Assembly (NCBI GenBank): GCA_002269645.1
Contig: NIVC01004520.1
Location: 1 to 43,452, forward strand
Source of the DNA: Macrostomum lignano
Taxonomy: Eukaryota
Direction of reading: 5' to 3'
DNA length: 43,452 nucleotides
Shown: positions 647 to 33,412 of the stretch, piece by piece
Position numbering within the stretch: the stretch's first letter is position 1
How the letters are laid out: every line of letters starts with the position of its first letter
Notes under the pieces: model-generated
Seen by the model: the letters and a program-made list of their open reading frames with translations, nothing else
The model's database searches: none
What the model was told of the DNA's origin: nothing
Program-made: the position numbers and the translations under genes

Positions 647-1262
647 TCAGTGGACCGATGAAGACGCTAGGGGACACCTCACCGAACACTGGAGCGCGAC
701 TAACGGCCTCCACGTCTGTAACGGAACCAGCCACACCAGGAGCAGCCCGAGCAGCGGATCCCGGAGCTCACCCGATCTGACGCTGGCAAAGGGCTTCCTG
801 ACCGCGATCATCCCGGCGGTTTGGAGGACCGAAAAGGATATGAGCAGCGATCATCTCCCCATCACCTTCCGCTGGCAATGGCAAGGCGCGAACTCAAGCA
901 CGGTATCACTCGCTGGAGCTTCGCCAAGGCCGACTGGCCCGCCTTCAGACAACATCTAGCCGACATCCAAGGACCCCAAGACTGGGGTGACGTGGACCCT
1001 GAACACGCGGCCCTCTGCGCCGACATCATCGAGGCCTCCACTCAGGCGATCCCCAGAGGCAGCCCCAAAAACAACCGCTGCCCTTTCTGGACCCCAGACT
1101 GCGAAATCAGCCGACAAGCCTGCATCAGAGCAAGGGCGACGGCCGAGTCCGACCCGACCCCAGGAAACCTCGCGGCCTACAACGCAGCTCGACATGCCGC
1201 CAGCAATACCATCCGCAAAGAGCGCAGAGGCTTCCTGGAAGACCGCGCCAGCGAAATGACGG

Positions 1263-2840
1263 TTGACAGCAACCTCTTCCGGCTCCTGCGCGCAGCCAGA
1301 GGAGATACGCCAGTCCCGCGCGGCAAAGTCGACATCACCCGGAAGTCGGTCGACGGCGTCGAGCTCCGACCGGCGCGCACCGACAAAGAAAAGGCAGACA
1401 CTTTCTGCCAAATCTACGCCGCTGCCGCCAGGGTCCCCGCCGACAGGAGGACTACAAGATCCGCTACGAGGCAAGACGCGCCAGGAGACGACCAGTCCAT
1501 CCGCCGGTACCCTTCACTCTCCTGGAGCTCAGATCAGCTATCCGACAACTCAAATCCGGCAAAAGCGCCGGGGAAGACGGCGTTACCAACGAGATGCTCA
1601 AACGCCTCCCACCGGCCACCGACCAACGCCTCCTGGACCTCATCAACCGCACGTGGATACAACAGCGCTGCCCCAGAAGCTGGAGGTCGGCAATCATCAT
1701 CCCAATTGCCAAAAAAGGGAAGACGCCACCCTCCCAACATCCTACCGACCGGTGGCCCTTACGAGCTGCATCGCCAAATGTGCGGAGAGGATGGTGCTCC
1801 AAAGACTCAACCGCCAGCTCGAAACCAACGGCTCCCTGTCCCCGGCACAAGCCGGATTCCGCAGCGGCCGCAGCACCGAGGAGCAGCTCGCCAGGGTCTG
1901 TCAGGACATCTTCGACGGCCTGGAACGCTCTCCACCGCACAGGAGCATCCTCGCGTGCATGGACTTCAAAGGAGCCTACGAAACGGTCTGGAAGGAAGGC
2001 CTCGTTGTGAAGATGACTCGAGTAAAGATCGACCAGAACATCATCGGCTGGACGGAAGCCTTCCTTTCCGACCGACGCGCAAGAGTCCGCTTCGGGCGCA
2101 CCCTGAGCCGCCAGCGCGTCTTCCGAGAGGGACTTCCACAAGGCTCGGTCCTGGCGCCAACTCTCTGGAACATCTACGTGAATGACCTAGAGGAGGCAGT
2201 AGTCACGACAGCAGCGCCGGACTGCGGCATCAGCCTCTACGCCGATGATTCGGCTGTCCTCAGCACCCAGCCCTCACTGGCGAGCTGCGGAGCCAGGATA
2301 CAACCGGCACTCGACCCTATAGCCAACTGGACCAAAGAGTGGAAAATCACCCTGAGTACCAGTAAGTGCTCAACATTCACGCTCGCCAAGCACGCAGCCA
2401 ACGTCTGCCGCCGCATGAGCCGACGCCGACGCGCTCTCGCCGACCTCGCGAACCGCGCGGTAGGAGCCACCCAGGAGGTGCTCCGGACGGCCTACCAGGC
2501 AACCATCCGCGCCGTGGCCGAATACGGATGCGGAGTCTGGGGAGCCAGCGCGGCACCGAGTACCAAACTGCTTATCGAACAGCAACAGAACAGCTGCGCA
2601 AGAATCATCACCGGATGCATGCTCCCAACTCAAACCACGGAGCTGCTTCGGACGGCCAACCTCCCCCCCTTTGGCCACACCATCCTGGAACGCACCGCCT
2701 GCCTCCGAGAACGGGTGCTGCGCCTCCCGGAGGACGTCCCAGCACACCGGACTGCGGCCAGAGACACCACCAGCAGACTACGAAACCGCGCCTACGAGAG
2801 CGCCCGCCGACAAGAAGAGGCAAATTTTAACGCGCTATAA
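1263..2840 (+). pseudogene. LINE reverse transcriptase domain (frameshifted upstream, apparent internal deletion after the YADD region)
   Basis: ORF 1263..2840 contains YRPVALTSCIAKCAERMV, DFKGAYETVW, PQGSVLAPTLWNIYVND and LYADD. The usual LGVxxD segment is missing around 2380-2400. Confidence 0.9.
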
Positions 2841-3855
2841 CGACTACAAGCGCCCTTTCCGCGGCTGCTGGCGGCGAATCGCGAGAGAAATCACCGATCC
2901 CTGCGGCCTCGAAGACCGGCCCAGAGAGCCGTTCCCGCCACCGCCGCCCGACCTGGCACACCTCGCGCTCAACCGGTACAGCCAGACTTTCGACCTCACC
3001 CTCGCCGACGGCTGCGGCAGAGCAGTCCCGACGAGCGTCCGCCGCGACAGGGCGATGTCAGCTCTCGAGCAGCTGACACCCTGTGACATCGACGCGTGGA
3101 CGGACGGCAGCGTCAAGGAGGGCATCCACGACGCATGGGGTGCCGCGGTGGTCTGCACCCGCCTCTGGTGCCAAAAGATCACCGCCCCGGCCGGCCGGAT
3201 CGCATGCAGCTTCCAGGCGGAGATGGTCGCGATCAGCGCCGCCCTCGACTACATTACTCAACTCCCGCCAGAGCACGGCCTTACAGTGCGGATCCTCAGC
3301 GACTCCAAATCAGCACTCACGGCCCTCCAGAGCGGCCCCAGTAGGCAGGACACCGCCGCCGGAAGCCGCTGCTGGGAGGCACTGGCCCACATGTCGCGCC
3401 CGTGCGACTTCGTCTGGGTCCCGGCCCACTGCGACGTCCCGGGCAACGAGCAAGCAGACCGCTGCGCCAACGAAGCTAGACGCGGCCAACAGCAGGACGA
3501 ACCCATTACGCTGCAGGCCGCCAAGGCCGCCATCCGACGCGCGCGGTCCGCCCGCGACCAGGAACTGCTTGGACGCCCCTGGCAACGACCACCACGACAC
3601 CTGACCAGGAAAGAAACGGTGGCGATTAACCAACTCAGAGCCGGGTGCTCCACCCTGGCCGGGGCCACACGCCACCGGGTCGGCCTGACTGAGAACGCCA
3701 GCTGTCCTGACTGCGGGGCGCCCGACACGGAGGAGCATATCATCCTTGAATGCCCACGCGGCGACGCCCTTCGGGAGAGCACTGAGGACGAGAGGGACAT
3801 CCGCGACGACCCGGAGCGCCTTCTCGCCCTCCTTCGCAGGTTGGGGCGCCTCTGA
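2671..3855 (+). pseudogene. LINE RNase H domain and C-terminal Cys/His motif
   Basis: RNase H D-E-D-D motifs (DAWTDGS, QAEMVA, LSDSKS, NEQADR) followed by CPDCGAPDTEEHIILEC. Confidence 0.9.
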
Positions 3856-5703: not shown

Positions 5704-6233
5704 ATGCTTCTGAAAATGCTTTGGCTGCTGCTGATCCTGCTGTGGCCGACTTTCGTGACGGCCTCTGACGAGCCGAACGTGGAGTGCCCGGAGCTGCACC
5801 CCAGCACCTTCTGCTCAGACGACGACATCCCGAGAAACTTCGAGTACAGCGACGGCTGCAGCCGCTACCGCTGCAACTTCATGTCCTACTCGACTCTGCA
5901 GAGCCGCGACTGTCCGCGAGCCGAGTCGCTCGCCGACCAGCGTCGGTGCCGCGATGTCGCCAGAGCGATTTTCAGTCGTCTCGAGCCGCGCACCTGCCCG
6001 AACGCGGCGCCCGCGACTGTCTGCGCCAGCGTGAGGGGCGTCAGAGGAGGAAACGGCAGCGGCTTTCGCTTCACCGACGGTTGCAACCGCTTCACCTGCG
6101 CACCCGACGGCTCCGTGGCGGGCAGCACCCGACTGTCTTGTCCTACTGGAGACGCTCGCAGGGCCTACTGCAGCTTTGTAGCCAACTTCCAGATTGAGGC
6201 AGTGATGAATAGCGCTGATGAGAGCGAAGACGG
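5704..6233 (+). CDS. Exon 1 of secreted multi-module Cys-rich protein (signal peptide + module 1, pacifastin-like units)
   Basis: ATG at 5704; hydrophobic leader MLLKMLWLLLILLWPTFVTA; 12-Cys module; phase-2 donor GG|GTAAGC at 6234. Confidence 0.85.
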
Positions 6234-6406
6234 GTAAGCAGTCGGACACAAACATGATAGATACAAACAGTTTAAAAGCTTTCTTGAGTCAATGGTTGGC
6301 CTTTGTTATCTCACAAACTTGACGCAAAAAGCACAATGAGAATGTTCACTTTTGCAGCTTCATTTTAAAATTCATCAAATGACATTCTCATTACGTTGTT
6401 CGCCAG

Positions 6407-6883
6407 TCAACTGGCGTTAGTCGCTCCTAACGTGGAGTGCCCGGAGCTGCACCCGAGCACCTTCTGCTCAGACGACGACATCCCGAGAGACTTCGAGTAC
6501 AGCGACGGCTGCAGCCGCTACCGCTGCAACTTCATGTCCTACTCGACCCTGCAGAGCCGCGACTGTCCGCGAGCCGAGTCGCTCGCCGACCAGCGTCGGT
6601 GCCGCGATGTCGCCAGAGCGATTTTCAGTCGCCTTGAGCCGCGCACCTGCCCGAACGCGGCGCCCGCAACCGTCTGCGCCAGCGTGAAGGGCGTCGGAAG
6701 CGACCAAGACGGATTCCGCTTCACCGACGGTTGCAACCGCTTCGCCTGCGCACCTGACGGCTCCGTGGCGGGCAGCACGTGGCGGAGCTGCATCGCAGGC
6801 AACGCTCGCAGGGCCTACTGCAGCTTCATCGTTGAAGTACAGATTGATGCTGCTGGCGAAAGTTTAAACCGGAGTAGCGTTGA
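6407..6883 (+). CDS. Exon 2 (module 2) of the secreted Cys-rich protein
   Basis: Acceptor ttgttcgccAG at 6405-6406 gives an in-frame phase-2 join (G-QLALVAPNVEC); phase-2 donor GA|GTAAGC at 6884. Confidence 0.85.
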
Positions 6884-7689
6884 GTAAGCCCGGGGTTGCT
6901 GCGGTTTGCAAAAAAAGTGTACGCAAAAAGTCGCATGTCTTGTTTGAAAGAGCATGTTTTGAGCATCCATCCACCGAAAGATGTATTGGCAGAGATGAGC
7001 AATTTTTGGTTGCTACGAAAATAACAATTCAAGGATCGAACCCATCTGATAAGTCGTAGGAAATCCATTATCAGTAAGATCGTTACTCTGTCGAGAGGCA
7101 ACAGTAAAGGAGAAAATATTTCAGAGGTTTAAAACCGTTGCGATGTGAGTGGCGGTCCAGAACCAAACACTTGGACTGGGCGTCGGGGAGCTCCCAGCCA
7201 CACCACTGTCATTGCTAGCGGGTCGCAAAGACGACGGACTTGCATGAGGATGTCCGCATTCCCGCTACTTTCTCAATGAGCACAATGCCAAATCAAACTC
7301 TCAGGCTTGCTGAAATACGAGTAATCGGCCTGGACGATGTCATCCACTCCGACTGTTCTTTTAATGTTTTGAAGACTCTCAAGGATGTGCGAGCGTATTG
7401 TAGCCTTAGGTTGCTGGGCGGCTTCTCGATTGGTGAGCTGCCATTAGAACGAACGAATTCTGGCCTAGAAATAAATGACAGCCAGCTTCGCAAAGTTACT
7501 TGTGCCTTTGTCGATAGACAATTTACTCCTACGTAATTTTACGTGAAGTTGAGTATCTCAAATAATATAGATAGAACATGATTAAGATATATTTTTCTAA
7601 CCTTTCTGCAAACCGGAATCCTAGATTATAGGGTTACATCGTATATGGAAAAGTGAAATGCATTGACAAGAACTTTTTTGCCTTTCAAG

Positions 7690-8160
7690 AGAATTTTCGA
7701 CGGCAAACGTGGAGTGCCCGGAGCTGCACCCCAGCACCTTCTGCTCAGACGACGACATCCCGAGAAACTTCGAGTACAGCGACGGCTGCAGCCGCTACCG
7801 TTGCAACTTCATGTCCTACTCGACCCTGCAGAGCCGCGACTGTCCGCGAGCCGAGTCGCTCGCCGACCAGCGTCGTTGCCGCGATGTCGCCCGAGCGATT
7901 TTCAACCGTCTCGAGCCGCGCACCTGCCCGAACGCGGCGCCCGCAACCGTCTGCGCCAGCGTGAGGGGCGTCGGAAGCGACCAAGACGGATTCCGCTTCA
8001 CCGACGGTTGCAACCGCTTCGCCTGCGCACCTGACGGCTCCGTGGCGGGCAGCACGTGGCGGAGCTGCATCGCAGGCAACGCTCGCAGGGCCTACTGCAG
8101 CTTCATCGTTGAAGCACAGATTGATGCTTCTGGTGAAAGTTTAAACCGGAGCAGCGTTGA
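7690..8160 (+). CDS. Exon 3 (module 3) of the secreted Cys-rich protein
   Basis: Acceptor tttttgcctttcaAG at 7688-7689 is in frame (E-EFSTANVEC); phase-2 donor GA|GTAAGC at 8161. Confidence 0.85.
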
Positions 8161-8771
8161 GTAAGCCAGGGGTTGCAGTTAATTACGTCGAAGTATGTTC
8201 TGTTGATGCTCGCGAGAAACGGCATGATGTGTTTGATAGCGAGCGTTTTTGCAATCCGTTGGAACATTCGCAAATTTCTGCAAAGTAAATGGAGTTTATA
8301 ATCAGTAAAACAGAAATAAGCCTTCTCGATTTTTCTGGCATCCTAATATGACGATAGTTTAATTCAGATTATTTACTCAACCGACTTACATCATGCAAAA
8401 TCTGTACTGAGTTGTTTATTAATGAAGGAAGTGCATTACGAAAACTTCTGGGTCCTTCAAAAATGAACATTCGTCCTTCTTTTAGTGGCTTGCGATTAGC
8501 TCGTAAAATAAAAAGTTATTTCGGGATCGGGTTTAACTCGAACCCCGAAAAAACGGCAATCTTAAACACCACAAGGACCCTCCCGGGCTACGCCGGTCTG
8601 TCGGGGTTTCAGTGAGGTCATTGAACATTGAACTCAGAAATATTGTAAACTACCAACCTAGAGCACTTGCAAAGCGATTGACTTGAGCTTTCTATTACAC
8701 TCCAAATTTTACTAGGGCGCACTGATTAGGTGGCGCATTTCAATATTTTCCCAATCATGTTATACTTATAG

Positions 8772-9224
8772 AGACTTTTTGACGGCAAACGTGGAGTGCC
8801 CGGAGCTGCACCCGAGCACCTTCTGCTCAGACGACGACATCCCGAGAAACTTCGAGTACAGCGACGGCTGCAGCCGCTACCGCTGCAACTTCATGTCCTA
8901 CTCGACTCTGCAGAGCCGCGACTGTCCGCGAGCCGAGTCGCTCGCCGACCAGCGTCGTTGCCGCGATGTCGCCAGAGCGATTTTCAGTCGCCTTGAGCCG
9001 CGCACCTGCCCGAACGCGGCGCCCGCGACTGTCTGCGCCAGCGTGAAGGGCGTCGGAAGCGACCAAGACGGATTCCGCTTCACCGACGGTTGCAACCGCT
9101 TCGCCTGCGCACCTGACGGCTCCGTGGCGGGCAGCACCTGGCGGAGCTGCATCGCAGGCAACGCTCGCAGGGCCTACTGCAGCTTCATCGAACGAGACCA
9201 GCAAGTTGACGGCATGGAAGTTGG
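8772..9224 (+). CDS. Exon 4 (module 4) of the secreted Cys-rich protein; ends at TGA 9226-9228 or splices on
   Basis: Acceptor tatacttatAG at 8770-8771 is in frame (E-DFLTANVEC); potential phase-2 donor GG|GTGAGA at 9225. Confidence 0.82.
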
Positions 9225-9984
9225 GTGAGAGTCGATAATAGATACGAGAATCTAGAGAGCAGACTATTCATAAGTGACACGGCGTAAAAGACGTAATACT
9301 CGTATGCACGACTCCCGGTGGTCGGTAATTTTGAAGTTCATTGAAAATCTTGGCCTGTTTTGTTCAGAATTTGTTTCGGCCATTTGTCATGAAGTTAAGT
9401 AAGAGTAGTAATATTCAATACATTTACACTACGGTCTACAGCTACATAAGTTTCAAATGGAGATTGCAAGCCTTGATTTTCGTAGAGTAGCACAGTTAAT
9501 GCCTGGATTCTTCCAGCAAGGATGACTTGCAGCAAGAAGATGCACATAAACGAGCTGTTTTTGGTAATTTCGTTTCTGGATTAGAATTTCTAGAACAGGA
9601 TCCCAATCTTGAAATCCCGAGATCTAATCTTGAAAATTAGTGGTTAATGCGAATCGACCTTTACTGGTTACGAGCTTCCATTTGGGACAGACTGGTTGAT
9701 AACTCGTTTGCATTGTAAAGTTCGTCCCTATAAAATACAGTGTAGTCAATGGCCCATTTGAACTGCGGATCACCTTCCCCAACTTTAATTAACCATTACA
9801 CAGGCCGCTATTCCGACGCCGCCGCAGGACTTCAGAGAAGCTGCACTGAGAGATGAAGCTGAACAAATCTAAATGCGAGATGCATCATTGGAATGAACTA
9901 TTTGCACGCAATATGAGTTGTCTAAACACCCAAAAAACTTAGATTACTAACACTGTTACCTGACCTCCTAAGACACGGAATGTG

Positions 9985-11195: not shown

Positions 11196-11299
11196 CTGCG
11201 GGGTGGGGCGGCCAGGGACCACTAGGAATAAGAGGACTCGGATCGAGGCAAAATATGAAGACCTAACTCATTCCATGCAACCTCATCCCAAATGCCCCC

Positions 11300-11893
11300 A
11301 GTAGTGTGATCCTAATCTTACTGTAGTGTGATTATAATCCATCTGCAGTGTGATCCCAATCCCCCAGTAGTGTGATCACAATCCCCCAGTAGTGTGATCA
11401 CAATCCCCTCATAGTGTGATCCCAATCCCGCAGTAGTGTGATCCCAATCCCGCAGTAGTGTGATCCCAATCCCGCAGTAGTGTGATCCCAATCCCCCTGT
11501 AGTGTGATCCCAATCCCGAAGTATTGTGATCCCAATCCCGCAGTAGTGTGATCCCAATCCCGCAGTAGTGTGATCCCAATCCCCCTGTAGTGTGATCCCA
11601 ATCCCGCAGTAGTGTGATCCCAATCCCCCTGTAGTGTGATCCCAATCCCGCAGTAGTGTGATCCCAATCCCCCTGTAGTGTGATCCCAATCCCCCAGTAG
11701 TGTGATCCCAATCCCCCAGTAGTGTGATCCCAATCCCCTCATAGTGTGATCCCAATCCCGCAGTAGTGTGATCCCAATCCCCCAGTAGTGTGATCCCAAT
11801 CCCCCAGTAGTGTGATCCCAATCCCCCAGTAGTGTGATCCTAATCCCCCAGTAGTGTGATCCCAATCCCTCAGTAGTGTGATCCCAATCCCCT
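11300..11893. repeat. 22-bp minisatellite (CAGTAGTGTGATCCCAATCCCS), about 27 units, in the centrin intron
   Basis: Direct tandem repeats read from the sequence; the spurious ORFs over it have a 22-aa (3-unit) period. Confidence 0.97.
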
Positions 11894-14961: not shown

Positions 14962-17505
14962 GTGCTGGACCGGCTGCTCGCCCATGGCGTAACGCTTAAC
15001 ACCGCCAAGTGCCAGTGGGCTGCAGAGTCCGTGCAGTTTCTGGGCTACATCGTCTCGGCGAGAGGCCTTCAGCCGATGCAGTCCAATGTGGAAGCCATCG
15101 AAGCGGTGCCGGAGCCTCAGAACACCGAGGCGGTGGCCTCATTTCTCGGAATGGTAAAGTTTTACTCGAACTTCCTACACAACCTATCCGACATCGCCGA
15201 GCCGCTGCTGCAGCTACTTCGCAAGGACCAGCCTTGGAACTGGACAGCGGACTGCCAGAAGGCCTTTTGGAGGCTTAAGAAAATGGTAGTGTCTCCAACG
15301 TGCCTGCGATTCTTCTGTCCCGACGACAAGATAATCGTGGCCTGCGACAGCTTTGCGCACGCTCTGGGTGCCGTGTTGATGCAAGAAGACAGCGCTGGCG
15401 TTCGCAAGCCAGTTGCTTTCGCGTCGAGGACTCTGTCGGCGACCGAGCGCAAGTACTCCGCGTCAGAAAGAGAGGCGCTGGCATGTATCTTCGCCTGCGA
15501 GCGTTGGCACTACTTCCTGTTCAGCCGGAGATTCGAACTGCACACCGATCACCAGGCTCTGACGACGCTGCTGACGGCTCAAGGCAGCGGCCACCGACCT
15601 TTGCGGCTGCACCGATGGGCCGACCGCCTGCTCGCGTACGACTTCCAAGTGTGCCACGTTCCCGGCAAGAAGAACATCGTGCCCGACTTTTTGTCACGCC
15701 ATGGCGCTTTCGGAGAAGATTGCGCTGAAGATCCGACCGAGCACCAGGTGAATGCCGTATTGTTATCGGGCGCGTTGGAGGTTGTCAGCGCAAGCGAGTT
15801 GGCCGAGGCATCCCTGCAGGACCCGGTAATAAGCGAAGTGATAGCTCTGACGCTCCAGGGGTGGCCGAGCTCCATCAAGCATCTGCGGTCGGAGTTGCAG
15901 CCGTTCTGGAGGATCCGAATGCAGCTGACGGCCTGGAATGACGGCAAGTGCCTGGCCAACGGCACTCGAGCGGTGATCCCCGCATCCCTGAGGGAGAAGA
16001 CGCTGCAGCTGGCACACTTCGGACACCTCGGCGTGAGCAGAATGAAGCAGCACTGTCGGGACGCCGTCTGGTGGCCGCAAATCGACCAGCACATTGAGGA
16101 GTTCGTGCGGCACTGTGAGGCCTGTCTGCTAAGCGAGAAGAATTTCAAGCCATCCAAGACGGTTCTGACCCCGACAAAGTGGCCGACGCGTCCATGGGAG
16201 GAGCTTCAGCTAGACATCTTTGGGGAGCTGCACTCGGCTCCGAACTCCTGCCGCTTCATCCTGGTGCTGTAAGACTTGCACTCAAAGTGGCCGGAGGCTG
16301 CCTGCATGTCAACCATCACAAGCGCTGATGTCATCGACGCCTTGACAACGTGGTTTAGTCGTTGGGGGCTGCCGAAGAGTATCAACACAGATGGAGGGCC
16401 TCAGTTCGTGTCCGGTGATTTCGAGGATTTTCTCCGGCGCTGTGGCATCCAGCATCGGCAGTCGCCGCACTACCACCCTCAGGGCAACGCGGCGGTGGAG
16501 CGTTTCAACCGGTTTCTCAAGGACGGCCTCAAGACGCACTTGGAGGAGGGCTATGACTTTAAGGACGCGGTGAAGGCACTGCTGTGGTCGTACAGAGCCA
16601 CCCCGCATGCACTGACTGGAGTTACGCCGGCGGAGCTGATGACAGGCCGGAAGATCAGCACTCCCCTGACAGCCCTACAGCCAAGGACGGCAGCGCGGCA
16701 CAGACTGGCGGCCGGCATCAAGCGGAAACAGCAGCGAGTTTTCAACCAGCTCAACTCGACCAGGAGACCCCCGCCGACTTTCATGGTCGGCGACTGGGTG
16801 CGGGTGAAGCGGCCGTTCGCCCGTGGCAAGCTAAGCAGCCGCCTGTCCGAGCCTCGTGAGATCTCCCGGATCGCGAGCGCCACCACCGTCATCCTCAATG
16901 ATGGCTCCCGCTGGCACGTCGACAATTGTGTTCGAGTGCCGCGGCCCGCCGGAGCGCTGCCACACTGGCCCGCTACGGCTTCCAGCGCGGCGGCGATTCC
17001 GGCGGAGGCAGCAGAGCCAGCGCAGCCGCAGCAGACAGCCCAGACTGCGGTTCGAGTGAGCACGAGGACGCGAGCGCCTCCACAGTGGTACGGGGAAATT
17101 GTGACGCATTAACTGATTTATTAGTGACTGCTAACTGACTTTCTCACGAATGATGTGCATTTGAAGCCAAATTAGTTGTTTTCAGACTAATATTGCGATT
17201 TAATGCTCAGTGAAATACTCAGTGTGATGATCTACTTTTATTCCTTCGATGCTCAGTCATGCGCTTTTATTCCTTGTTCAATATTTCGACGAATTCGGTT
17301 TTCGCGATTCCACTAATCGGAAGGGAAGGTGAATGTTGTGTTGCTACTCAATGTGTGTGTGTAGTTGTGTGTACGTTCGTTGTACATCTGTTAGCTATCG
17401 ATCGCATTACAATATATGATATATAAGTGAGAGCGCGTTGAGTTTGAGAGCTTGAGAGTTTCGCAAACAAACTTGCAGACTGGCTGGCTTATTCATTATA
17501 CAACA
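14962..17505 (+). mobile_element. 5'-truncated Ty3/Gypsy LTR retrotransposon (RT end, RNase H, integrase, PPT, 3' LTR)
   Basis: Motifs VQFLGY, RNase H (CDS..LGAVL, EREALAC, TDHQAL), H2C2 (AHFGH..CEAC) and integrase core (LDIFG, TDGGPQF, NAAVERFNR). One nonsense TAA at 16270-16272. PPT GGAAGGGAAGG at about 17319-17329. No 5' LTR or gag. Confidence 0.93.
17334..17505 (+). repeat. 3' LTR (172 bp, TGTTGT..ACAACA)
   Basis: 6-bp inverted termini immediately after the PPT. Confidence 0.85.
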
Positions 17506-24719: not shown

Positions 24720-24754
24720 TGGTGGCAGCACTACCTACGCTTCAAGTACTGTTT

Positions 24755-26055
24755 CAGCAAGCATCACATGGCATCAGCAGCATCACATGGCATCAGCAAG
24801 CATCACATGGCATCAGCGGCATCACATGGCATCAGCGGCATCACATGGCATCAGCAAGCATCACATGGCATCAGCGACATCACATGATGGCATCAGAAAG
24901 CATCACATAGCATCAGCAAGCATCACATGGCATCAGCAGGCATCACATGGCATCAGCAGCATCACATGGCATCAGCAGCATCACATGGCATCAGCAAGCA
25001 TCACATGGCATCAGCGGCATCACATGATGGCATCAGCAGCATCACATGGCATCAGCAGCATCACATGGCATCAGCAAGCATCACATGGCATCAGCGGCAT
25101 CACATGATGGCATCAGCAGCATCACATAGCATCAGCAAGCATCACATGGCATCAGCAGGCATCACATGGCATCAGCAGCATCACATGGCATCAGCAGCAT
25201 CACATGGCATCAGCAAGCATCACATGGCATCAGCGGCATCACATAGCATCAGCAAGCATCACATGGGGTGGCATCAGCAAGCATCACATGGCATCATCGG
25301 CATCACATGGCATCAGCGGCATCACATGGCATCAGCGGCATCACATGATGGCATCAGAAAGCATCACATAGCATCAGCAAGCATCACATGGCATCAGCAG
25401 GCATCACATGGCATCAGCAGGATCACATGGCATCAGCAAGCATCACATGGCATCAGCAGCATCACATGGCATCAGCAGCATCACATGGCATCAGCAAGCA
25501 TCACATGGCATCAGCGGCATCACATAGCATCAGCAAGCATCACATGGCATCAGCGGCATCACATGGTGGCATCAGCAAGCATCACATGGCATCATCATCA
25601 CATGGCATCAGCGCATCACATGGCATCAGCGGCATCACATGCATGGCATCACATGGCAAAGCATCACATAGGCATCAGCATCACATGGCATCAGCAGCAT
25701 CAGCATCAGCATCACATGGCATCAGCAGGATCACATGGCATCAGCAAGCATCACATGGCATCAGCAGCATCACATGGCATCAGCAGCATCACATGCATCA
25801 GCATCAGGCATCAGCATCACATGGCATCAGCAGGCATCACATCACATGGCATCAGCAAGCATCACATGGCATCGGCGGCATCACATGGTGATATCGCAAG
25901 CATCACATGGCATCATCGGCATCACATGCATCAGCAGCATCACATGGAAGCAAGCATCACATGGAATCAGCAGCATCACATAGCATCACATGGCATCAGC
26001 AAGCATCACATGGCATCAGCAGCATCACATGGCATCAGCAAGCATCACATGGCAT
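24755..26055. repeat. 19/20-bp minisatellite (GCATCACATGGCATCAGC[A/AA/G/AG]), about 65 units
   Basis: Direct reading. Variant units recur in a higher-order order in the first 800 bp; the right third is degenerate. Confidence 0.97.
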
Positions 26056-27535: not shown

Positions 27536-27586
27536 TGGCGTCGCAAGCAGGATACGAACCTGCGCGGGGAAACCCCATTGGATTTC
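27536..27586 (-). other. 51-nt copy of the 3' half of mature tRNA-Ser (extended PBS); not a tRNA gene
   Basis: Reverse complement is GAAATCCAATGGGGTTTCCCCGCGCAGGTTCGTATCCTGCTTGCGACGCCA: anticodon 3' side, long variable arm, T-arm, G73 and CCA. Confidence 0.9.
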
Positions 27587-29137
27587 CATTCCATCCGGGA
27601 CCAGCTCGTCGCGACATGCACCTCCGACAAACTGCGCAGACGGCTGCTCCAAGAAGCAGACATCACGCTGGAGGATGCCCTGCGGAAGGCCAGAGCATTC
27701 GAGGCTGCGGAAGAGCAGGCTGCTGAGATGGAGAAGACCACCGACGCCCAGGTAGCTAACCTGGCCAGGAGCAGCAAAACAGCGACAGACAGACGCGGAC
27801 CCGCCAGCGAACCGAGATCAAAGCCGAGCCAGATGAACATCTGCTACCGATGCGGCGAGCGTGGCCACGCCACCTGCGACGCAGCCAGAGGCAGGATCTG
27901 CAATAACTGCGGTAAGCCAAATCACCTGGCCAAGGCGTGCCGTCAACCGTGCTCAGCCAGCAGCAGAGCCCGGCAGCAGATTCACGCCAACGCAGACTGC
28001 ACGGTCCCTGACGCCGTCGCCAGCGAAGACGTGTTCACCCTGCACAGAAACGGCACCTACCCGGCTGAGGTCTCGCTGAAAGTCCAAGTGGGAAGTCGGC
28101 AGCTCTCGATGATGATCGACAGCGGTGCCAGCTGCAGCATTATGAGCAGCCGCACTTTCAAGACGCTCAATCGGCCTCACCTGCGAACTCCAGAATCAGA
28201 AGTCAGAGCCTATGGCTGCTCTGCACCACTCAACATCTTCGGAATCGCCGACCTGGAAGTTCGCGTCGGAGCAGTCAGCACCGTCGTGCCCTTCCACATC
28301 ATGGATGGCGATGGTCTCACAATACTCGGTCGCGATCCCACATTCAGGCTCGGAGTTCTCAAAATTCAGCGCCCGGAGTTCAATGCGACGGAAGCCGTGA
28401 ATTCGAACAGCGACTCGGCGCGTCCGTCGCCACAGCTTCAGGACATTCTACACCGGCACAAAACAGTCTTCGAAGGCATCGGATGCATCAAAGGTGTACA
28501 GGTCAGAGTGCAGCTGTCAGACAACGCCGTGCCAGTCTGCCACGCGCCATCCCGGGTGGCGGCGCACCTGAGAGCAGCCGTGGTGGATGAGCTGAAGGCA
28601 CTGGAGCGGCAGGACATCATCGAGTCAGTCAAGGGTCCCAGCACCTGGGTGGCACGCATGGTCGTGGTGCCCAAGACCGATGGCGGCGTTAGGATCTGCC
28701 AAGACCTTCGCGACCTGAACGCCTTTGTGGTCCCCGAAAAGCAGCAGATTCCGACCCTGGACGAGGTCACCGAGGAGATGTCCGGAGCCAAGCTGTTCAG
28801 TGAGCTGGACATCCGGAAAGCCTTCTACCAGATTCCGGTGCACGAGGACAGCCGCCATCTCTTCACGTTTAGCACGCCGCTCGGACTGATGCGACTCAAG
28901 AGGCTGAGTATGGGCTTCACCAACGCTTCGGAGATCCTTCAGCGGGTCATGCTGGGCATCCTCAGCGGCATCGACGGTGTCAGGTGGGTCCACGACGACG
29001 TCATCGTCTACGCCGCGGATGCCAAGCAGCACCACGACAGACTGGACGCCTGCCTTCACCGCCTCCGCGAATTCGGCATCACGCTGAACAAGGTCAAGTG
29101 CAAGTTCGCCAAACCGGCTGTTGAATTTCTCGGGATG
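27578..29137 (+). pseudogene. Element A gag (C-terminal part)-protease-RT, cut at FLGM by the element B insertion
   Basis: RDQLVATCTSDKLRRRLL, CX2CX4HX3C and CX2CX4HX4C knuckles, IDSGASC, WVARMVVVPK, LSMGF, VHDDVIVY. Confidence 0.92.
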
Positions 29138-31603
29138 TGTTGTGTACGAAGCCGAGCGGCTCAATATCGCGCAAACCTAAACTTTGCCCAGAGGGCTGTG
29201 CCGCGCTTTAGCCCACGCGTATATTTCTACCATAGATAAGGTTATAAAGGTACTGAGCCCAATACCCAACATCTCCCCTTTTGATTCAAAACACAATGGG
29301 TCCTTCAGTCATAGGACTTCATTTGGGGGTTGACCTGAAGCCGAACAGGTTGTCGGCGGTTTCGTATGGGCCACCTCGTTTGCGGCTCGGGTTCTCTGGG
29401 CTTGCTATTCCGTCTTGCGTGCAACGATGTCGCATCACGATGTCGTGCTTCAGCTGCCAGGACCGGTAGTCTTCTTCTGAGCAATCTCCGATTTCTTCTC
29501 AGCACTCTACCGCTTGCCAGTTTGACCAGGAAGTCATTGTTTTTCATCGCTTCGACGATCACACCGTATCGATCCCACTTCTTGGTCTGGACGTCTTGCA
29601 CTGCAACTCTGTCTCGCATTTTCAGTCTTGGTAGTTAATGGGCTGCTTGGTCGAATGTCGGACTTGCACAGACTTCTTTCTTCGATGCCGATTGTTCGCA
29701 ACATTTTTACTGGGATCGCGTTGATAAACGCACCCGTGTCTGGCAGTGCGGGAATGACCCTCACTCCATCGTCAGTTTTGACGCTCAAACAACAACAACA
29801 ACAACAGAGTACGCTGTCAGTTCGCAAAAGCAGCGTCAGATGGCTCGCTTCGAAGCTTGGGCGCGAACAAAGGCCGCACCGCCGGCAGAGTCCGGGGCGC
29901 CGGCGTCAGCCAGCAGACAGTCGACGTAGCGCCGAGTCCTCGCCTGTCCCCGCCGGTAGGGTGCCTGCAACGTAAGTAGCAGCACCTCCTGCACCGGCTC
30001 CGGACAGTAGGCCTCGGCGCGGATGACGTGGCCTGCCAGCTGGAGTCGCCGACGGCGCAGCAGATCGCTAGGACGGGCCAGGCCGGCGCGATGATAGAGC
30101 GCCGTGTTGGTGACTCGCTCGTTGCCGATCTTGAAGGCGGCGCGCAGCAGGCCAGCGTGCGCCGCGTCAACTTGAGCCTCGAGCGAGTCTGTCAGCGTCC
30201 AGGTCTCGGCGTTGTATAACAGGACGGTCTCGATCACCGCCTGGAACAGCGCCGCCCTCTGGCGGTCCGGTAGGGCCTCGGACTGCAGGACTGACCTTAT
30301 AGAACGAAAGGCAGCCCAGGCAAGTCCTCGGCGACGCCGCAGATCCTCGCGGACGTCGGGAACCAGACCGCCGAGGTAGACGAACTGCTGACATCTTGGA
30401 AGCTCACTCGCCTGTCCGTTAGCGCCTCGGCAGAAGATTGCAGCCTCGGTGTCGTCCGGCACGCATAGCACGACGGTCTTCTGCGTGTTGACCACCAAAC
30501 GCAGAAGACCGTCGACGCTCAAACGCACACAGCTTGATGCGATTTCGCTATTCTCCGTCTTCGTTGCAGCAAAAATCGAATTCATATTATCGCTTGTCTT
30601 GTGTGGCTTTCCATTCCTGCATTGCTTAGCAAAATGGTTAGCCTTACCGCACTTGGTGCACGATTTCCCCCAGGCTGGACATTTCTCCTTTCCGCGTTCG
30701 TGCTCACATCCGCAGAATTTGCAGATTGGGTGCTTCGCCACTATCTGACTTCGTTGAGCGGGTCCACCTGCCTGGCGGGCATCTGCGGCGGCAGTTTGCT
30801 TGGCCTTCTTGTAGCTCGAAACTCTTCGAACTGCAGAGATTGTCGACGTCTCGCCCTTCATCGCGGCACAATTCTTCTTGGAGCTTTCCATTGACTCACA
30901 AATCGTCTTGGCTCTTTCTAGTGTCAGCTCGCTGCCTTCTTCCAGCAACTTCTCCACTGTGCTGTGATCTCGAAGCCCCATGACGATTCTGTCTCTGATC
31001 TGGCACTCCGCACATATACCACAGCAGCGCTCAAAGTTGCATCGCGATGCATTTCCTTTATTGCCACGTACCAGTCGCTGAACGATTGCCCTCCATCTGA
31101 TTCCGTAACGAAAACTCGCGGCGCTCGAATATTTCATTTCGCTGGCCCGTGATGAACAGCTCCAGGGCCTTGATGATCTCTCCGGCGTCGTTCTTGTTCT
31201 CCTCGGTCAGATGCGGCAAGCTGTCCACGACGCGCAGTGTCTCCATGCTCAGGCATTGGCGTAGCGCGAAAAGACGGTACTTCTTTTTCTCGTCCTCGTT
31301 GTCCAGACTGTTGAGTCCTGAGAGCTCCTCGAAGGCCTCCCACAGTAGCTTCCAATGTGGGTATAGCTCCTTCTGTGACTCGATGTCGAAGTGCGGCGCA
31401 CTTCGGACGTCGATCTTGGGTGCCATCTTGCACTTTTGGGCTTTTCACTTGGCTGCTTGCGATGCCATGTTGTGTACGAAGCCGAGCGGCTCAATATCGC
31501 GCAAACCTAAACTTTGCCCAGAGGGCTGTGCCGCGCTGTAGCCCACGCATATATTTCTACCATAGATATAAGGTTATAAGGGTACTGAGCCCAATACCCA
31601 ACA
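29138..31603 (-). mobile_element. Gypsy element B, non-autonomous deletion derivative (gag, protease start, integrase tail), inserted antisense in the RT of element A
   Basis: LTRs 29138-29271 and 31468-31603 (TGTTG..CAACA; 3 substitutions and one 2-bp indel). 5-bp TSD GGATG at 29133-29137 and 31604-31608. PBS TGGCATCGCAAGCAG; PPT AAGGGGAGA. gag MAPKID..; LPDTGA; VLRRNRRLL tail; no RT, RNase H or integrase core. Confidence 0.95.
29791..30513 (-). mobile_element. 5'-truncated RTE-like non-LTR retrotransposon inserted in element B
   Basis: FVYLG, LLYNAETWTL and LQLAGHVIR C-terminal RT motifs; (GTT)n tail; 11-bp TSD GACGCTCAAAC at 29780-29790 and 30514-30524. Removing it restores CVRLSV-KTDDGVRVIPALPDTGA. 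Confidence 0.92.
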
Positions 31604-31608
31604 GGATG

Positions 31609-33412
31609 CACCTGTCAGCCAAAGGCATCCAACCAGCTGCTGAGAAAATCCGCGCAATGCAAGACTTCCGGCAGCCCGCCAATGTCTCAGAAGTTCGGTC
31701 GTTTCTCGGCACCGCAACTTTCTGGCGAAATTCATCCCAAGATTCGCCGACGTGTCAGCCCCGCTGCGCCATTTGACCAAGAAGGGCCAGCCATGGGAAT
31801 GGACTGCCAGCCACACTGAGGCGTTCAGCACAATCAAGAAGGCCATCGCCGGAGCCGACACGCTGGCGTTCTTCGACCGCAAGCGGCAGACGGAGCTTCT
31901 GGTGGACGCATCTTCCATCGGTCTCGGCGCCATCCTCACCCAGAAGCAGCCAGACGGCAGCAGCAGACCCGTGGCCTACGCCAGATGTGTCAGCAGGTGC
32001 CGTGCCAAAGGATTCAGCCTTCAGCAGATCTGAGACTCTTCAAGGACTGACACGGAGATCCAGGCTGCACTCAGCGCGATCAAAACCGGCAGCTGAACAT
32101 GCTCGATCCGGTGCAACGCTCACTCAAGTCCAGCAGCAGCGAACTTTCCGAGAGCGACGGAATTCTGCTCCGCGGAGATCTCATCGTTGTCCCCGAGTCG
32201 CTGCGGAGACCGATACTGCAGCTGGCCCATACGGGACATCTCGGTGCGGACAGAACCCTGAAGTGACTGCAGACCAAAGTCTGGTGGCCAAAGATGCGCA
32301 GCGACTGCGAAGTATTCGTCAAGTGCTGTGTCGGTTGCCAAGCAGCGGCCACGCACGTGCACCAGACGCCTTTGAAGCCGACGGAGATGCCGGGCGGACC
32401 TTGGCAACTGCTCGGCATGGACTTCTACGGCCCGGTGCAAGGTCAGATGCTGCTGGTCACCACGGACCTGTGCTCCAAGTACCCGGAAGTCGACATCATG
32501 CAGTCAACGACGGCCGGCAACGTGACACCGCATCTGAGACGGCTGTTCGGTCGGCACGGCATCCCTGCTGAGGTCATCACGGACAACGGACCGCCCTTTA
32601 ACTCTGCCGACTTTCGCAGCTTCCTCAGCGGATACGGAGTTCATCATCGGCTCATCTGTCCGCTGCATCCGGAGTCCAACGGAGCCACCGAGCGTGTCAA
32701 CCGCAGCATCGGGAAGGTCGTGAAGACTGCTGTCGCTGAAGGTCGGAACTGGAGAGAGGCCCTGGACGACTGGCTTCTGGCGTTCCGCACAACGCCTCAC
32801 CGAGCAACTGGGCGGACTCCGGCCGAGCTCTTCATGGGCAGGCCGATCAACGACGGAATCCCAGCCAGCAGGCAGCCGAAGTCATCTGACGTCAGCCAGG
32901 AAGCCGTGAAAGATGAAGAGTGCGTTCGACAGGCGCTCGGCCGCAAAGAAGCACCGCATCGTTCCCGGCATGAGTGTTCTTCGCAAGCAGCAGGCACGCA
33001 AAAAACGCAGCTGCCATTCGAAACTCAGCCATGGACGGTGCAGGAGGTTCGAGGCGACACCTGCGTCCTACGGCGAGGCCAGCAGTATTGTATGCGGCAC
33101 GTGACCCAGCTGCGGCCTCTGATGGAACCGGCGGGCCAGTCCACCGGCCAGTCCACCGGCCAGTCAGCCGGCCAGTCCGCCGGCCAGTCCACCGGCCAGT
33201 CCGCCGGCCAGTCCGCCGGCCAGTCAGCCGGCCAGTCAGCCGGCCAGTCAGCCGCCGGCCAGTCAGCGCCGGCCAGTCCGACGGCCAGTCAGCTGGTCAG
33301 TCCGCCGGCCAGTCCGCCGGCCAGGCCGCTAGTGAAGAAGCAGAGTCTGTGGCTCAGAGACGGCATCCAAGAGCAGCCCGCGACACGCCGAAGTGTTATA
33401 CGAGTTAAGTAA
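31609..33412 (+). pseudogene. Element A RT end, RNase H (partly deleted) and integrase, with stops and frameshifts
   Basis: HLSAKGIQP resumes FLGM; LLVDASSIGLGAILTQ; AHTGHLG..CVGC; GPWQLLGMDFYGP; VITDNGPPF; ESNGATER. Confidence 0.92.
33134..33325 (+). repeat. 12-bp tandem repeat (GGCCAGTCMRCC) encoding (GQSA/T)n in the integrase tail
   Basis: Direct reading; in frame within ORF 32294..33412. Confidence 0.9.

What the first reader, a model, noticed from the sequence alone, without database searches (positions are those of the whole stretch)
5704..9228. Four-module secreted protein built from divergent pacifastin-like units lacking one disulfide
Seen: a signal peptide plus four modules of about 135 aa, each made of two sub-repeats, C..C..F-x-[YF]-x-DG-C-[SN]-R-[YF]-x-C-x7/8-[LS]-[QT]-x3-C..C. 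Established: pacifastin inhibitors have C-x9/12-C-N-x-C-x-C-x2/3-G-x3/4-C-T-x3-C with C1-4, C2-6 and C3-5 bonds, and P1 just after the C-T. Inference: in both sub-repeats the C3 and C5 equivalents are replaced together (Y/F and L/S), as expected for loss of a bonded pair, and extra flanking Cys could add a new bond. Module 1 differs from modules 2-4 mainly at the putative reactive loop (STRLSC vs STWRSC), suggesting trypsin-type vs chymotrypsin-type specificity. This may be an undescribed multi-headed protease-inhibitor family.
Basis: partly seen in the sequence, partly recalled or inferred. Interest (0 to 1): 0.7.

Follow-up and report, generated by a model that had tools for sequence, protein, structure and literature searches.

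The report
Flatworm pacifastin-like four-module secreted protein
This is a real, transcribed gene of the flatworm Macrostomum lignano for a secreted protein made of four near-identical modules whose eight cysteine-rich units are divergent relatives of the arthropod pacifastin protease inhibitors. They have lost one of the three classic disulfide bonds and probably gained a new one, so it is a new variant of a known inhibitor family rather than a new family.

Summary
The window is contig NIVC01004520.1 of Macrostomum lignano. The gene is BOX15_Mlig033021g1 (PAA47244.1, "hypothetical protein").

The pacifastin reading is supported:
- Pfam Pacifastin_I is the only meaningful hit (31.5 bits for the whole protein, cut-off 27.9).
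- Profiles built only from the non-canonical units retrieve almost only solved locust pacifastins from all PDB sequences.
- hhalign against arthropod domains gives 95-97% probability.
- An exhaustive search of 1.84 billion proteins finds only Macrostomum paralogues and true arthropod pacifastins.
- The paralogues end in a unit that keeps the full six-Cys signature inside the same extended frame.
- C3 and C5 are present together in 5 units and absent together in 28, and never occur singly.
- An AF2 model (pLDDT 81) has the three-stranded sheet, and its best PDB matches are pacifastins, though not significantly.

B units keep Asn, the hinge Gly and the P2 Thr, with P1 Arg in module 1 and Trp in modules 2-4. 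A units are more degenerate. Inhibitory activity is inferred, not shown. Verdict: a new variant of a known kind, of moderate interest.

The parts
5704..6233 (+). Exon 1: start codon, signal peptide (5704-5766) and module 1. Unit A is 5776-5985 and unit B is 5986-6177.
   Evidence: The donor is GG|GTAAG, phase 2. It is identical to GenBank model PAA47244.1.
6121..6141 (+). Putative reactive loop of the module 1 B unit, G-S-T-R-L-S-C. Ser stands at the C5 (P3) position, Thr is P2, Arg is P1 and Leu is P1'.
   Evidence: Alignment to arthropod and solved pacifastins.
6407..6883 (+). Exon 2: module 2. Unit A is 6429-6638 and unit B is 6639-6827. The loop G-S-T-W-R-S-C is at 6771-6791.
7690..8160 (+). 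Exon 3: module 3. Unit A is 7706-7915 and unit B is 7916-8104. The loop G-S-T-W-R-S-C is at 8048-8068.
8772..9224 (+). Exon 4: module 4. Unit A is 8788-8997 and unit B is 8998-9186. The loop is at 9130-9150. If the donor at 9225 is not used, the frame ends at TGA 9226-9228.
9804..9849 (+). It completes a Gly codon and encodes PLFRRRRRTSEKLH plus the stop codon, giving a basic tail or a possible proprotein-convertase site.
   Evidence: Searches show acceptor ..acag|g. The five-exon translation equals P0012/PAA47244.1. The gene range in the record is 5707-9849.

Best explanation
The locus is the expressed Macrostomum lignano gene Mlig033021. It encodes a secreted, non-processed chain of four exon-duplicated modules.

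**Unit architecture.** Each module contains two extended pacifastin-like units. A unit is a pacifastin core that keeps C1, C2, C4 and C6, and so (by inference) the C1-C4 and C2-C6 bonds. The C3-C5 bond has been replaced by a hydrophobic residue (F/Y) paired with a small or aliphatic residue (S/L). The core is wrapped by an N-terminal segment and a C-terminal helix that carry one extra Cys each. These two are inferred to bond to each other.

**Likely mechanism.** The four B units keep the Asn after C2, the hinge Gly and the Thr at P2. They most likely act as canonical (Laskowski-type) tight-binding heads against S1 serine proteases. Module 1 has P1 Arg, suggesting a trypsin-like target. Modules 2-4 have P1 Trp, suggesting a chymotrypsin-like target.

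The A units have lost those three residues but are under very strong purifying selection. They most likely serve as structural or spacer units, or bind something else.

**Shown:** gene structure, transcription-based model, homology to pacifastin, paired Cys loss, and purifying selection.

**Inferred:** disulfide connectivity, inhibitory activity, specificities and the biological role.
For: **Gene**
- Splice sites are canonical and all phase 2, and the ORF is identical to GenBank PAA47244.1.
- The Mlig_3_7 GenBank annotation derives from RNA-seq and transcriptome assembly (PMC5730564).
- dN/dS is 0.03-0.08 in unit A plus linker, and about 0.37 between the module 1 B unit and the others.

**Homology to pacifastin**
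- Pfam Pacifastin_I scores 31.5 bits, E 1.5e-7, with four stretches on the B units. The best single unit scores 20.9 bits.
- A profile of B units alone against 177,635 PDB sequences hits 1KIO (6e-4), 1GL1/1PMC (1e-3), 7SGQ, 1KGM, 2XTT and others. The ten best hits are all pacifastins.
- For the A-unit profile, all seven hits are pacifastins, the best at 5.6e-3.
- hhalign against 22 arthropod domains gives 97.0% (E 1e-10) for B and 95.4% (E 2e-8) for A.
- The exhaustive HMMER search returns nine proteins. One is this locus's own older gene model. Four are Macrostomum-type paralogues or orthologues, three are multi-domain arthropod-type pacifastins, and one is a spurious bacterial protein.

**Bridge to the canonical domain**
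- P0003, P0006, P0007, P0014 and P0015 end in a unit reading DGCN-x-C-x-C...C-T-R-x-x-C inside the same Ca...Cf frame.
- Across 33 units, C3 and C5 are both present in 5, both absent in 28, and never occur singly.

**Loop signature across 18 distinct units**
- P2 is T in 14 and S in 2.
- P1 is R7, L4, F3, W1, M1, S2.
- P1' is R10, M3, L2, K2, A1.
- This is the same repertoire as the arthropod domains.
- Orthologues at 60-64% identity keep their loops.

**Fold**
- The AF2 model has pLDDT 81.3, with strands 29-31, 36-39 and 45-48.
- Foldseek ranks 1, 2 and 7 are pacifastins. TM-score normalised by target is 0.56-0.57 and rmsd is 1.5-2.2 A over 27 columns.
Against: [quoted passage not shown] Loss could abolish tight binding or turn the units into substrates.
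- Each single unit is below Pfam's gathering score.
- The Foldseek E-values (1.2) are not significant. The AF2 alignment contained true pacifastins, so the fold result is partly circular.
- No biochemical, expression-site or target information exists.
- Trp at P1 is unusual. Without C5 the loop register could shift, making Arg the P1 in modules 2-4.
Confidence: 0.6

Rival explanations
1. The units descend from pacifastin but no longer inhibit. The protein is a structural, matrix, adhesive or egg/ejaculate component, or a binding scaffold, in which the Cys-rich units serve only as stable building blocks.
For: - The loop-bracing C3-C5 bond is lost in all eight units.
- The A units also lack the Asn, the hinge Gly and the P2 Thr, yet they are the most strongly conserved part (dN/dS 0.03-0.08).
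- There are no dibasic processing sites between modules.
- The 2026 survey describes non-arthropod pacifastin-like domains as often embedded in multidomain matrix-associated proteins (PMC13388995).
Against: - The B units keep the P2 Thr and typical P1/P1' residues.
- Loops are conserved between orthologues but differ between units.
- The differences between module 1 and modules 2-4 concentrate in and around the loop.
- No other domain types are present in the protein.
Confidence: 0.27
2. The protein is a thyroglobulin type-1 (thyropin-like) protein, as UniRef names the older gene models of this locus.
For: The UniRef names of A0A1I8G6F3, A0A1I8HYL8 and A0A1I8G3H8 say so.
Against: - Pfam Thyroglobulin_1 gives no hit at E up to 10 for the full protein or for those models.
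- No QC...CWCV signature is present in the sequence.
- Those gene models contain out-of-frame translated stretches.
- All profile evidence points to pacifastin.
Confidence: 0.02
3. The units are SVWC/VWC-type cysteine-rich domains, which would make them ligand-binding rather than inhibitory. The pacifastin hits would reflect only a shared local C-N-x-C-x-C-like motif.
For: - There are weak sub-threshold SVWC hits: E 0.34 on module 1 and 0.041 on P0005.
- True pacifastin proteins also cross-hit VWF-like models.
Against: - All SVWC scores are far below the cut-off (11.7-14.6 bits against 27).
- Searches of PDB sequences with the unit profiles return no VWC proteins.
- The bridging canonical units are full pacifastin signatures.
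Confidence: 0.04
4. The locus is a decaying tandem-duplicated pseudogene or an annotation artefact in a transposon-rich region.
For: - The gene lies between retrotransposon fragments and satellites.
- The M. lignano assembly is highly redundant (PMC5730564).
Against: - The ORF is intact across five exons with conserved phase.
- dN/dS is well below 1.
- The GenBank model is transcript-based and identical to my translation.
Confidence: 0.03

Closest known systems
Pacifastin family of serine protease inhibitors (MEROPS I19; Pfam PF05375), e.g. locust PMP-C/LCMI-II, SGCI, SGTI/SGPI-1 (PDB 1PMC, 1GL1, 1KGM, 1KIO, 2XTT, 7SGQ)
   Same: - The core motif F-x-x-x-D-G-C-N-x-[C]-x-C-x2-D-G-x4-[C]-T-P1-P1'-x-C-P is shared.
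- The spacing from C4 to C6 is the same, 13 residues in B units.
- C1, C2, C4 and C6 are conserved, as are the Asn after C2, the hinge Gly and the P2 Thr in B units.
- The predicted fold has the three-stranded sheet.
- The protein is a multi-domain secreted precursor with a signal peptide in exon 1.
   Different: - C3 and C5 are missing in all eight units of this protein.
- An additional Cys lies 8 residues before C1, and another lies 9-11 residues after C6 in a C-terminal helix.
- The C1-C2 loop is longer, at 14-18 residues.
- Units are organised in A+B pairs, one pair per exon.
- There are no dibasic cleavage sites between units.
- The host is a flatworm, not an arthropod.
Macrostomum paralogues Mlig001679 (PAA50211.1), Mlig003398 g1/g2 (PAA70141.1 and P0015) and Mlig004023 (PAA89725.1)
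   Same: - They share the extended 6-Cys units, the A+B module plan and one module per exon (P0003).
- They have a signal peptide and poly-Arg tracts.
- Modules are 37-46% identical to those of the window gene.
   Different: - The paralogues have one or two modules, or five units.
- Except for Mlig004023, they end in a unit that retains the full six-Cys pacifastin signature.
- The window gene is four copies of the non-canonical module type only.
"Ancestral" non-arthropod pacifastin-like domains described by Rodriguez-Aguilar et al. 2026 (PMC13388995)
   Same: - They occur outside arthropods, with Platyhelminthes listed.
- The segment between C1 and C2 is longer (13-20 residues).
- The potential for inter-domain processing is low.
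- Basic P1 residues are common.
   Different: - That survey accepted only domains with the conserved six-Cys scaffold, so four-core-Cys units such as these fall outside its criteria.
- No Macrostomum entry was found in its text or in the supplements held.
Kunitz/BPTI-type domains that lack one of three disulfides, e.g. conkunitzin-S1 (recalled from memory, not tested here)
   Same: They are a precedent for a small disulfide-rich inhibitor fold surviving the paired replacement of one disulfide.
   Different: The fold is unrelated. This is an analogy only.

Membership tests
Pacifastin (Pfam PF05375 / MEROPS I19) | Profile-level sequence similarity to the pacifastin domain | tested here: met
   - The whole protein scores 31.5 bits against a gathering score of 27.9, E 1.5e-7. 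Single units score only 15-21 bits.
- hhalign gives 95-97% probability.
- Unit-only profiles hit solved pacifastins first in all PDB sequences.
- Arthropod pacifastins are retrieved in return in the exhaustive search.
Pacifastin (Pfam PF05375 / MEROPS I19) | Six conserved Cys: C-x9-12-C-N-x-C-x-C-x2-3-G-x3-6-C-T-x3-C | tested here: not met
   - All eight window units have C1, C2, C4 and C6 only. C3 is F or Y, and C5 is S or L.
- The C1-C2 spacing is 14-18 residues.
- B units keep N, G and T. A units have S, no G, and Q.
- Paralogue C-terminal units do meet the full pattern.
Pacifastin (Pfam PF05375 / MEROPS I19) | Three-stranded antiparallel beta-sheet fold | tested here: inconclusive
   - The AF2 model has pLDDT 81.3 and three strands in the expected places.
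- The best PDB matches are pacifastins (TM by target 0.56-0.57, rmsd 1.5-2.2 A), but the Foldseek E-value is 1.2.
- The input alignment included pacifastins.
Pacifastin (Pfam PF05375 / MEROPS I19) | Disulfide connectivity C1-C4, C2-C6, C3-C5 | not testable with these tools
   - C3-C5 cannot exist.
- Retention of C1-C4 and C2-C6, and a new Ca-Cf bond, are inferred from conservation and parity.
Pacifastin (Pfam PF05375 / MEROPS I19) | Canonical-loop inhibition of S1 serine proteases, with P1 two residues after C5 | not testable with these tools
   Only the sequence signature is available: P2 Thr conserved, and P1 R/L/F/W/M.
Thyroglobulin type-1 / thyropin (Pfam PF00086), the UniRef name of older models of this locus | Profile match and the QC...CWCV motif | tested here: not met
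   There is no Thyroglobulin_1 hit at E up to 10, and the motif is absent from the sequence.
SVWC (Pfam PF15430) | Profile match above the cut-off, and eight Cys | tested here: not met
   Scores are 11.7 bits (E 0.34) and 14.6 bits (E 0.041) against a cut-off of 27.

The most novel reading that the evidence does not exclude
A flatworm lineage has re-engineered the pacifastin inhibitor scaffold. It removed the reactive-loop-bracing C3-C5 disulfide and replaced its stabilising role with a terminal Ca-Cf staple and flanking helices, while keeping functional canonical inhibition. This would give a two-core-disulfide pacifastin architecture with a natural Arg-to-Trp P1 switch that was then amplified by exon duplication and maintained by exon-restricted gene conversion.
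Probability: 0.4. Interest if true: 0.6.

Novelty: new variant of a known kind. Interest (0 to 1): 0.45.

Why it matters
Pacifastins were long treated as arthropod inhibitors defined by a strict six-Cys scaffold. The one recent survey that widened their range still required all six Cys. This gene family offers an internally controlled natural experiment. Within single Macrostomum proteins, units with and without the C3-C5 bond sit side by side in the same extended frame.

If the four-core-Cys units still inhibit, two things follow. The bond thought to brace the reactive loop is dispensable when the termini are stapled, which is useful for inhibitor engineering. And surveys that filter on six Cys undercount the family.

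It also corrects a public annotation: "thyroglobulin type-1" or "hypothetical protein" should read pacifastin-like. It gives M. lignano, a tractable RNAi and transgenesis model, a candidate multi-headed protease regulator to test.

Tried and rejected
1. A search of PDB sequences with the whole-module profile gave only spurious hits, a cytochrome c555 trimer and a metallo-beta-lactamase. The unit-level profiles were needed.
2. AF2 on a single module without an alignment gave pLDDT 50 and was unusable.
3. The word-indexed homology search with the nine-module alignment returned nothing at E 1e-3 or below, although its members are in the database. I treat this as a tool limitation, not as evidence.
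4. Foldseek against viral structures gave no meaningful match.
5. P0008, a 1491-aa bacterial-type protein with E 7e-9, has no pacifastin domain. I rejected it as a low-complexity or repeat artefact.
6. The thyroglobulin type-1 and SVWC readings were rejected.
7. Literature searches for the gene IDs, and for pacifastin together with Macrostomum, found nothing.
8. The supplements of the 2026 pacifastin survey contain no Macrostomum accession.
9. I looked for further pacifastin-like exons elsewhere in the window and found none.
10. Introns were compared for shared origin and gave no blastn matches.
Full report
**1. What is in the sequence**

The region 5704-9228 contains four direct DNA repeats of about 400 nt. 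They start at 5776, 6429, 7706 and 8788 and are 84-98% identical to the reference copies. Each lies in an open frame bounded by canonical splice signals.

Joining 5704-6233, 6407-6883, 7690-8160 and 8772-9228 gives one continuous 644-codon frame. All donors are G|GTAAG-type and all introns are in phase 2.

The N-terminus, MLLKMLWLLLILLWPTFVTA|SDEP, has the form of a signal peptide. I judged this from the sequence, since no predictor was available.

The window is contig NIVC01004520.1 of the Macrostomum lignano assembly GCA_002269645.1. GenBank already carries a model for this gene, BOX15_Mlig033021g1 / PAA47244.1, "hypothetical protein, partial", spanning 5707-9849. That model uses a further phase-2 donor (GTGAGA at 9225) and a fifth mini-exon, 9804-9849, which adds PLFRRRRRTSEKLH. 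My five-exon translation equals it residue for residue.

The GenBank annotation of this assembly was derived from a genome-guided RNA-seq transcriptome (PMC5730564). The exon junctions therefore have transcript support, although I could not inspect reads myself.

**2. Anatomy of the protein**

Each exon encodes one module with a 133-134 aa core and 12 Cys, 48 Cys in the mature protein. A module consists of two homologous units, A and B (hhalign 99.1%, E 1.9e-18).

Each unit follows the pattern Ca-x8-Cb-x14-18-Cc-x4-Cd-x12/13-Ce-x9-11-Cf.

The linkers between modules carry no dibasic sites. The only basic tracts are the RR pairs next to Cys inside units and the RRRRR in the tail.

**3. Selection and history**

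- Between modules, unit A plus linker has dS 0.07-0.17 and dN/dS 0.03-0.08.
- The B units of modules 2-4 are almost identical, with dS 0-0.03.
- The B unit of module 1 differs from them with dS about 0.45, dN about 0.17 and a ratio of about 0.37.
- The introns do not align with one another.

The exons are therefore constrained coding sequence and show a mosaic history, probably shaped by gene conversion. The module 1 B unit is kept distinct.

All amino-acid differences between module 1 and the others lie in unit B:
- an extra R after GV, then GNGS versus SDQD, before strand 1;
- T versus A after the C3 position;
- R-L versus W-R at P1-P1';
- P-T-x-D versus I-A-x-N after C6.

Comparison with paralogue P0003 unit 2 (GGGG...TRRSCPAG) suggests that the module 1 state, with P1 Arg, is the older one.

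**4. What the units are**

- **Pfam.** Pfam's only meaningful match is Pacifastin_I. It scores 20.9 bits for the module 1 B unit and 15 bits for a module 2-4 B unit. The whole protein scores 31.5 bits (E 1.5e-7) over four stretches, against a gathering score of 27.9. A units alone give no hit.
- **PDB sequences.** A profile built only from six non-canonical B units, searched against all 177,635 distinct PDB sequences, returns the solved locust pacifastins as its ten best hits. These include 1KIO (6e-4), 1GL1/1PMC (1e-3), 7SGQ, 1KGM and 2XTT. No other natural cysteine-rich family appears. A profile of ten A units returns seven hits, all pacifastins, the best at 5.6e-3.
- **Profile-profile.** Comparison with 22 arthropod pacifastin domains gives 97.0% (E 1e-10) for B and 95.4% (E 2e-8) for A. 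Cc aligns with C2, Cd with C4 and Ce with C6.
- **Exhaustive search.** A HMMER scan of 1.84 billion representative proteins with the module profile finds nine proteins. One is the locus itself. Three are M. lignano paralogues and one is an RNA-contig orthologue. Three are multi-domain pacifastin proteins: two named arthropod proteins (Rhynocoris, Trichomalopsis) and a 14-domain protein from a run of unknown species. One is a spurious bacterial protein.

**5. The bridge to the canonical domain**

The paralogues and orthologues P0003, P0006, P0007, P0014 and P0015 share the same extended units. Their last unit, however, reads ...F-x-DGC-N-x-C-x-C-x6-7-C-T-R-x-x-C-P... That is the complete six-Cys pacifastin signature, still flanked by Ca and Cf.

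Over the 33 units of the family that I parsed, C3 and C5 are both present in 5 units, both absent in 28, and never occur singly.

Ca and Cf are present in every Macrostomum unit and in none of the arthropod domains. If C1-C4 and C2-C6 are retained, Ca-Cf is the only pairing left. This is an inference.

**6. Structure**

With a 37-sequence unit alignment, AF2 gives a confident model of the module 1 B unit (pLDDT 81.3, pTM 0.66). It has three strands at 29-31, 36-39 and 45-48. These fall on F-R-F-T, R-F-T-C and V-A-G-S, the positions of the pacifastin sheet. It also has an N-terminal helix (10-16) and a C-terminal helix (61-68) that contains Cf.

Foldseek against the PDB ranks pacifastins first, second and seventh. 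7SGQ gives TM by target 0.56-0.57 and rmsd 1.5-2.2 A over 27 columns, and 1WO9 is also among them. The E-values are about 1, as is usual for 30-residue domains. The alignment also contained pacifastins. I therefore count this as consistent but not independent evidence.

**7. How it probably works**

In pacifastins the reactive site is C5-x-P1-P1'-x-C6 (PMC13388995). Across 18 distinct Macrostomum units:

| Position | Residues observed |
|---|---|
| P2 | T14, S2 |
| P1 | R7, L4, F3, W1, M1, S2 |
| P1' | R10, M3, L2, K2, A1 |
| Asn after C2 | 16 of 18 |
| Hinge Gly | 15 of 17 |
| Pro after C6 | 16 of 18 |

This is the repertoire of working inhibitors. The arthropod domains in the same alignment have P1 of L12, R4, F1, A1 and E1. 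Orthologues only 60-64% identical keep their loops in most units.

The window's B units fit this signature, with S-T-R-L-S-C in module 1 and S-T-W-R-S-C in modules 2-4. The window's A units do not. They have S for the Asn, no hinge Gly, and L-Q-S-R-D-C at the loop.

My best explanation is a secreted, unprocessed four-headed canonical serine-protease inhibitor. It would have one Arg head and three Trp heads, with A units acting as constrained structural partners.

The main objection is that the missing C3-C5 bond normally braces the loop, because C5 is P3. The chief rival reading is therefore a pacifastin-derived protein that is non-inhibitory and serves a structural or binding role. I put the inhibitor reading at about 0.6 and this rival at about 0.27.

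**8. Comparison with what is known, and novelty**

The classic view restricted pacifastins to arthropods, plus Onychophora and Trichoplax (PMC2689174). A 2026 structural survey extended them to many phyla, naming Platyhelminthes. It accepted only domains with the conserved six-Cys scaffold, and it does not mention Macrostomum in its text or in the supplements held. A monogenean proteome paper lists four MEROPS I19 hits without analysis.

UniRef auto-names two paralogues "Pacifastin domain-containing protein", evidently because of their canonical last unit. The older gene models of this very locus are named "Thyroglobulin type-1 domain-containing protein". I could not reproduce that name. Pfam Thyroglobulin_1 gives nothing at E up to 10, and those models contain out-of-frame stretches.

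So the family assignment is not categorically new. What is new is the variant: extended units with a terminal Cys pair, systematic paired loss of C3-C5, an A+B module encoded by each exon, and a four-module protein with no canonical unit at all. On present data it appears confined to Macrostomum.

**9. Verdict**

"Undescribed family" should be toned down to a lineage-specific variant of the pacifastin family. Interest is moderate, at 0.45.

Noticed in passing
window 5704-9224 (exons 1-4 and introns 6234-6406, 6884-7689, 8161-8771): Exons are 90-98% identical, but the introns give no blastn match to each other. dS differs sharply along the module. It is 0.07-0.17 in unit A, 0-0.03 in the B units of modules 2-4, and about 0.45 for the module 1 B unit against the rest. 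This suggests exon-restricted gene conversion, with a boundary near nt 6034-6045.
   Followed up: partly
window 9225-9849: A fifth phase-2 intron and a mini-exon (9804-9849) add a basic tail, PLFRRRRRTSEKLH. Paralogues also carry poly-Arg tracts: P0005 ends in RRRRRRR, P0006 ends in HRRRK, and P0003 has SMRRRRRNF between its modules. These may be proprotein-convertase sites or basic anchors.
   Followed up: partly
UniRef entries A0A1I8G6F3, A0A1I8HYL8 and A0A1I8G3H8 (P0001, P0002, P0013), older models of this locus: They are named "Thyroglobulin type-1 domain-containing protein", but Pfam Thyroglobulin_1 gives no hit. Two of them (P0001, P0002) contain out-of-frame translated stretches. This is probably a misannotation.
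   Followed up: yes
window 821-3855 (+): A non-LTR retrotransposon remnant lies directly upstream of the gene. It has overlapping ORFs with RVT_1 (E 3.8e-35) and RNase H (E 1.5e-9).
   Followed up: partly
window 14962-17112 (+), 27578-29239 (+), 32294-33412 (+): These are LTR-retrotransposon pol fragments. They carry RT_RNaseH, Integrase_H2C2, rve, a zinc knuckle, an aspartyl protease domain and RVT_1. The reading frames are broken into pieces, and I did not reconstruct them.
   Followed up: partly
window 11285-11892 and 24754-26055: Two satellite arrays are present. One has a 22-nt unit in 27.5 copies at 90% match. The other has a 19-nt unit in about 68 copies. Both produce long spurious ORFs on both strands.
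   Followed up: no
L003/L004 (Logan RNA contigs SRR30276804_36716 and SRR30276812_101601): Intronless contigs of about 1.9 kb encode P0007, a five-unit orthologue of Mlig003398g2 at 60% identity. It presumably comes from another Macrostomum species. The species of these runs could not be looked up.
   Followed up: no
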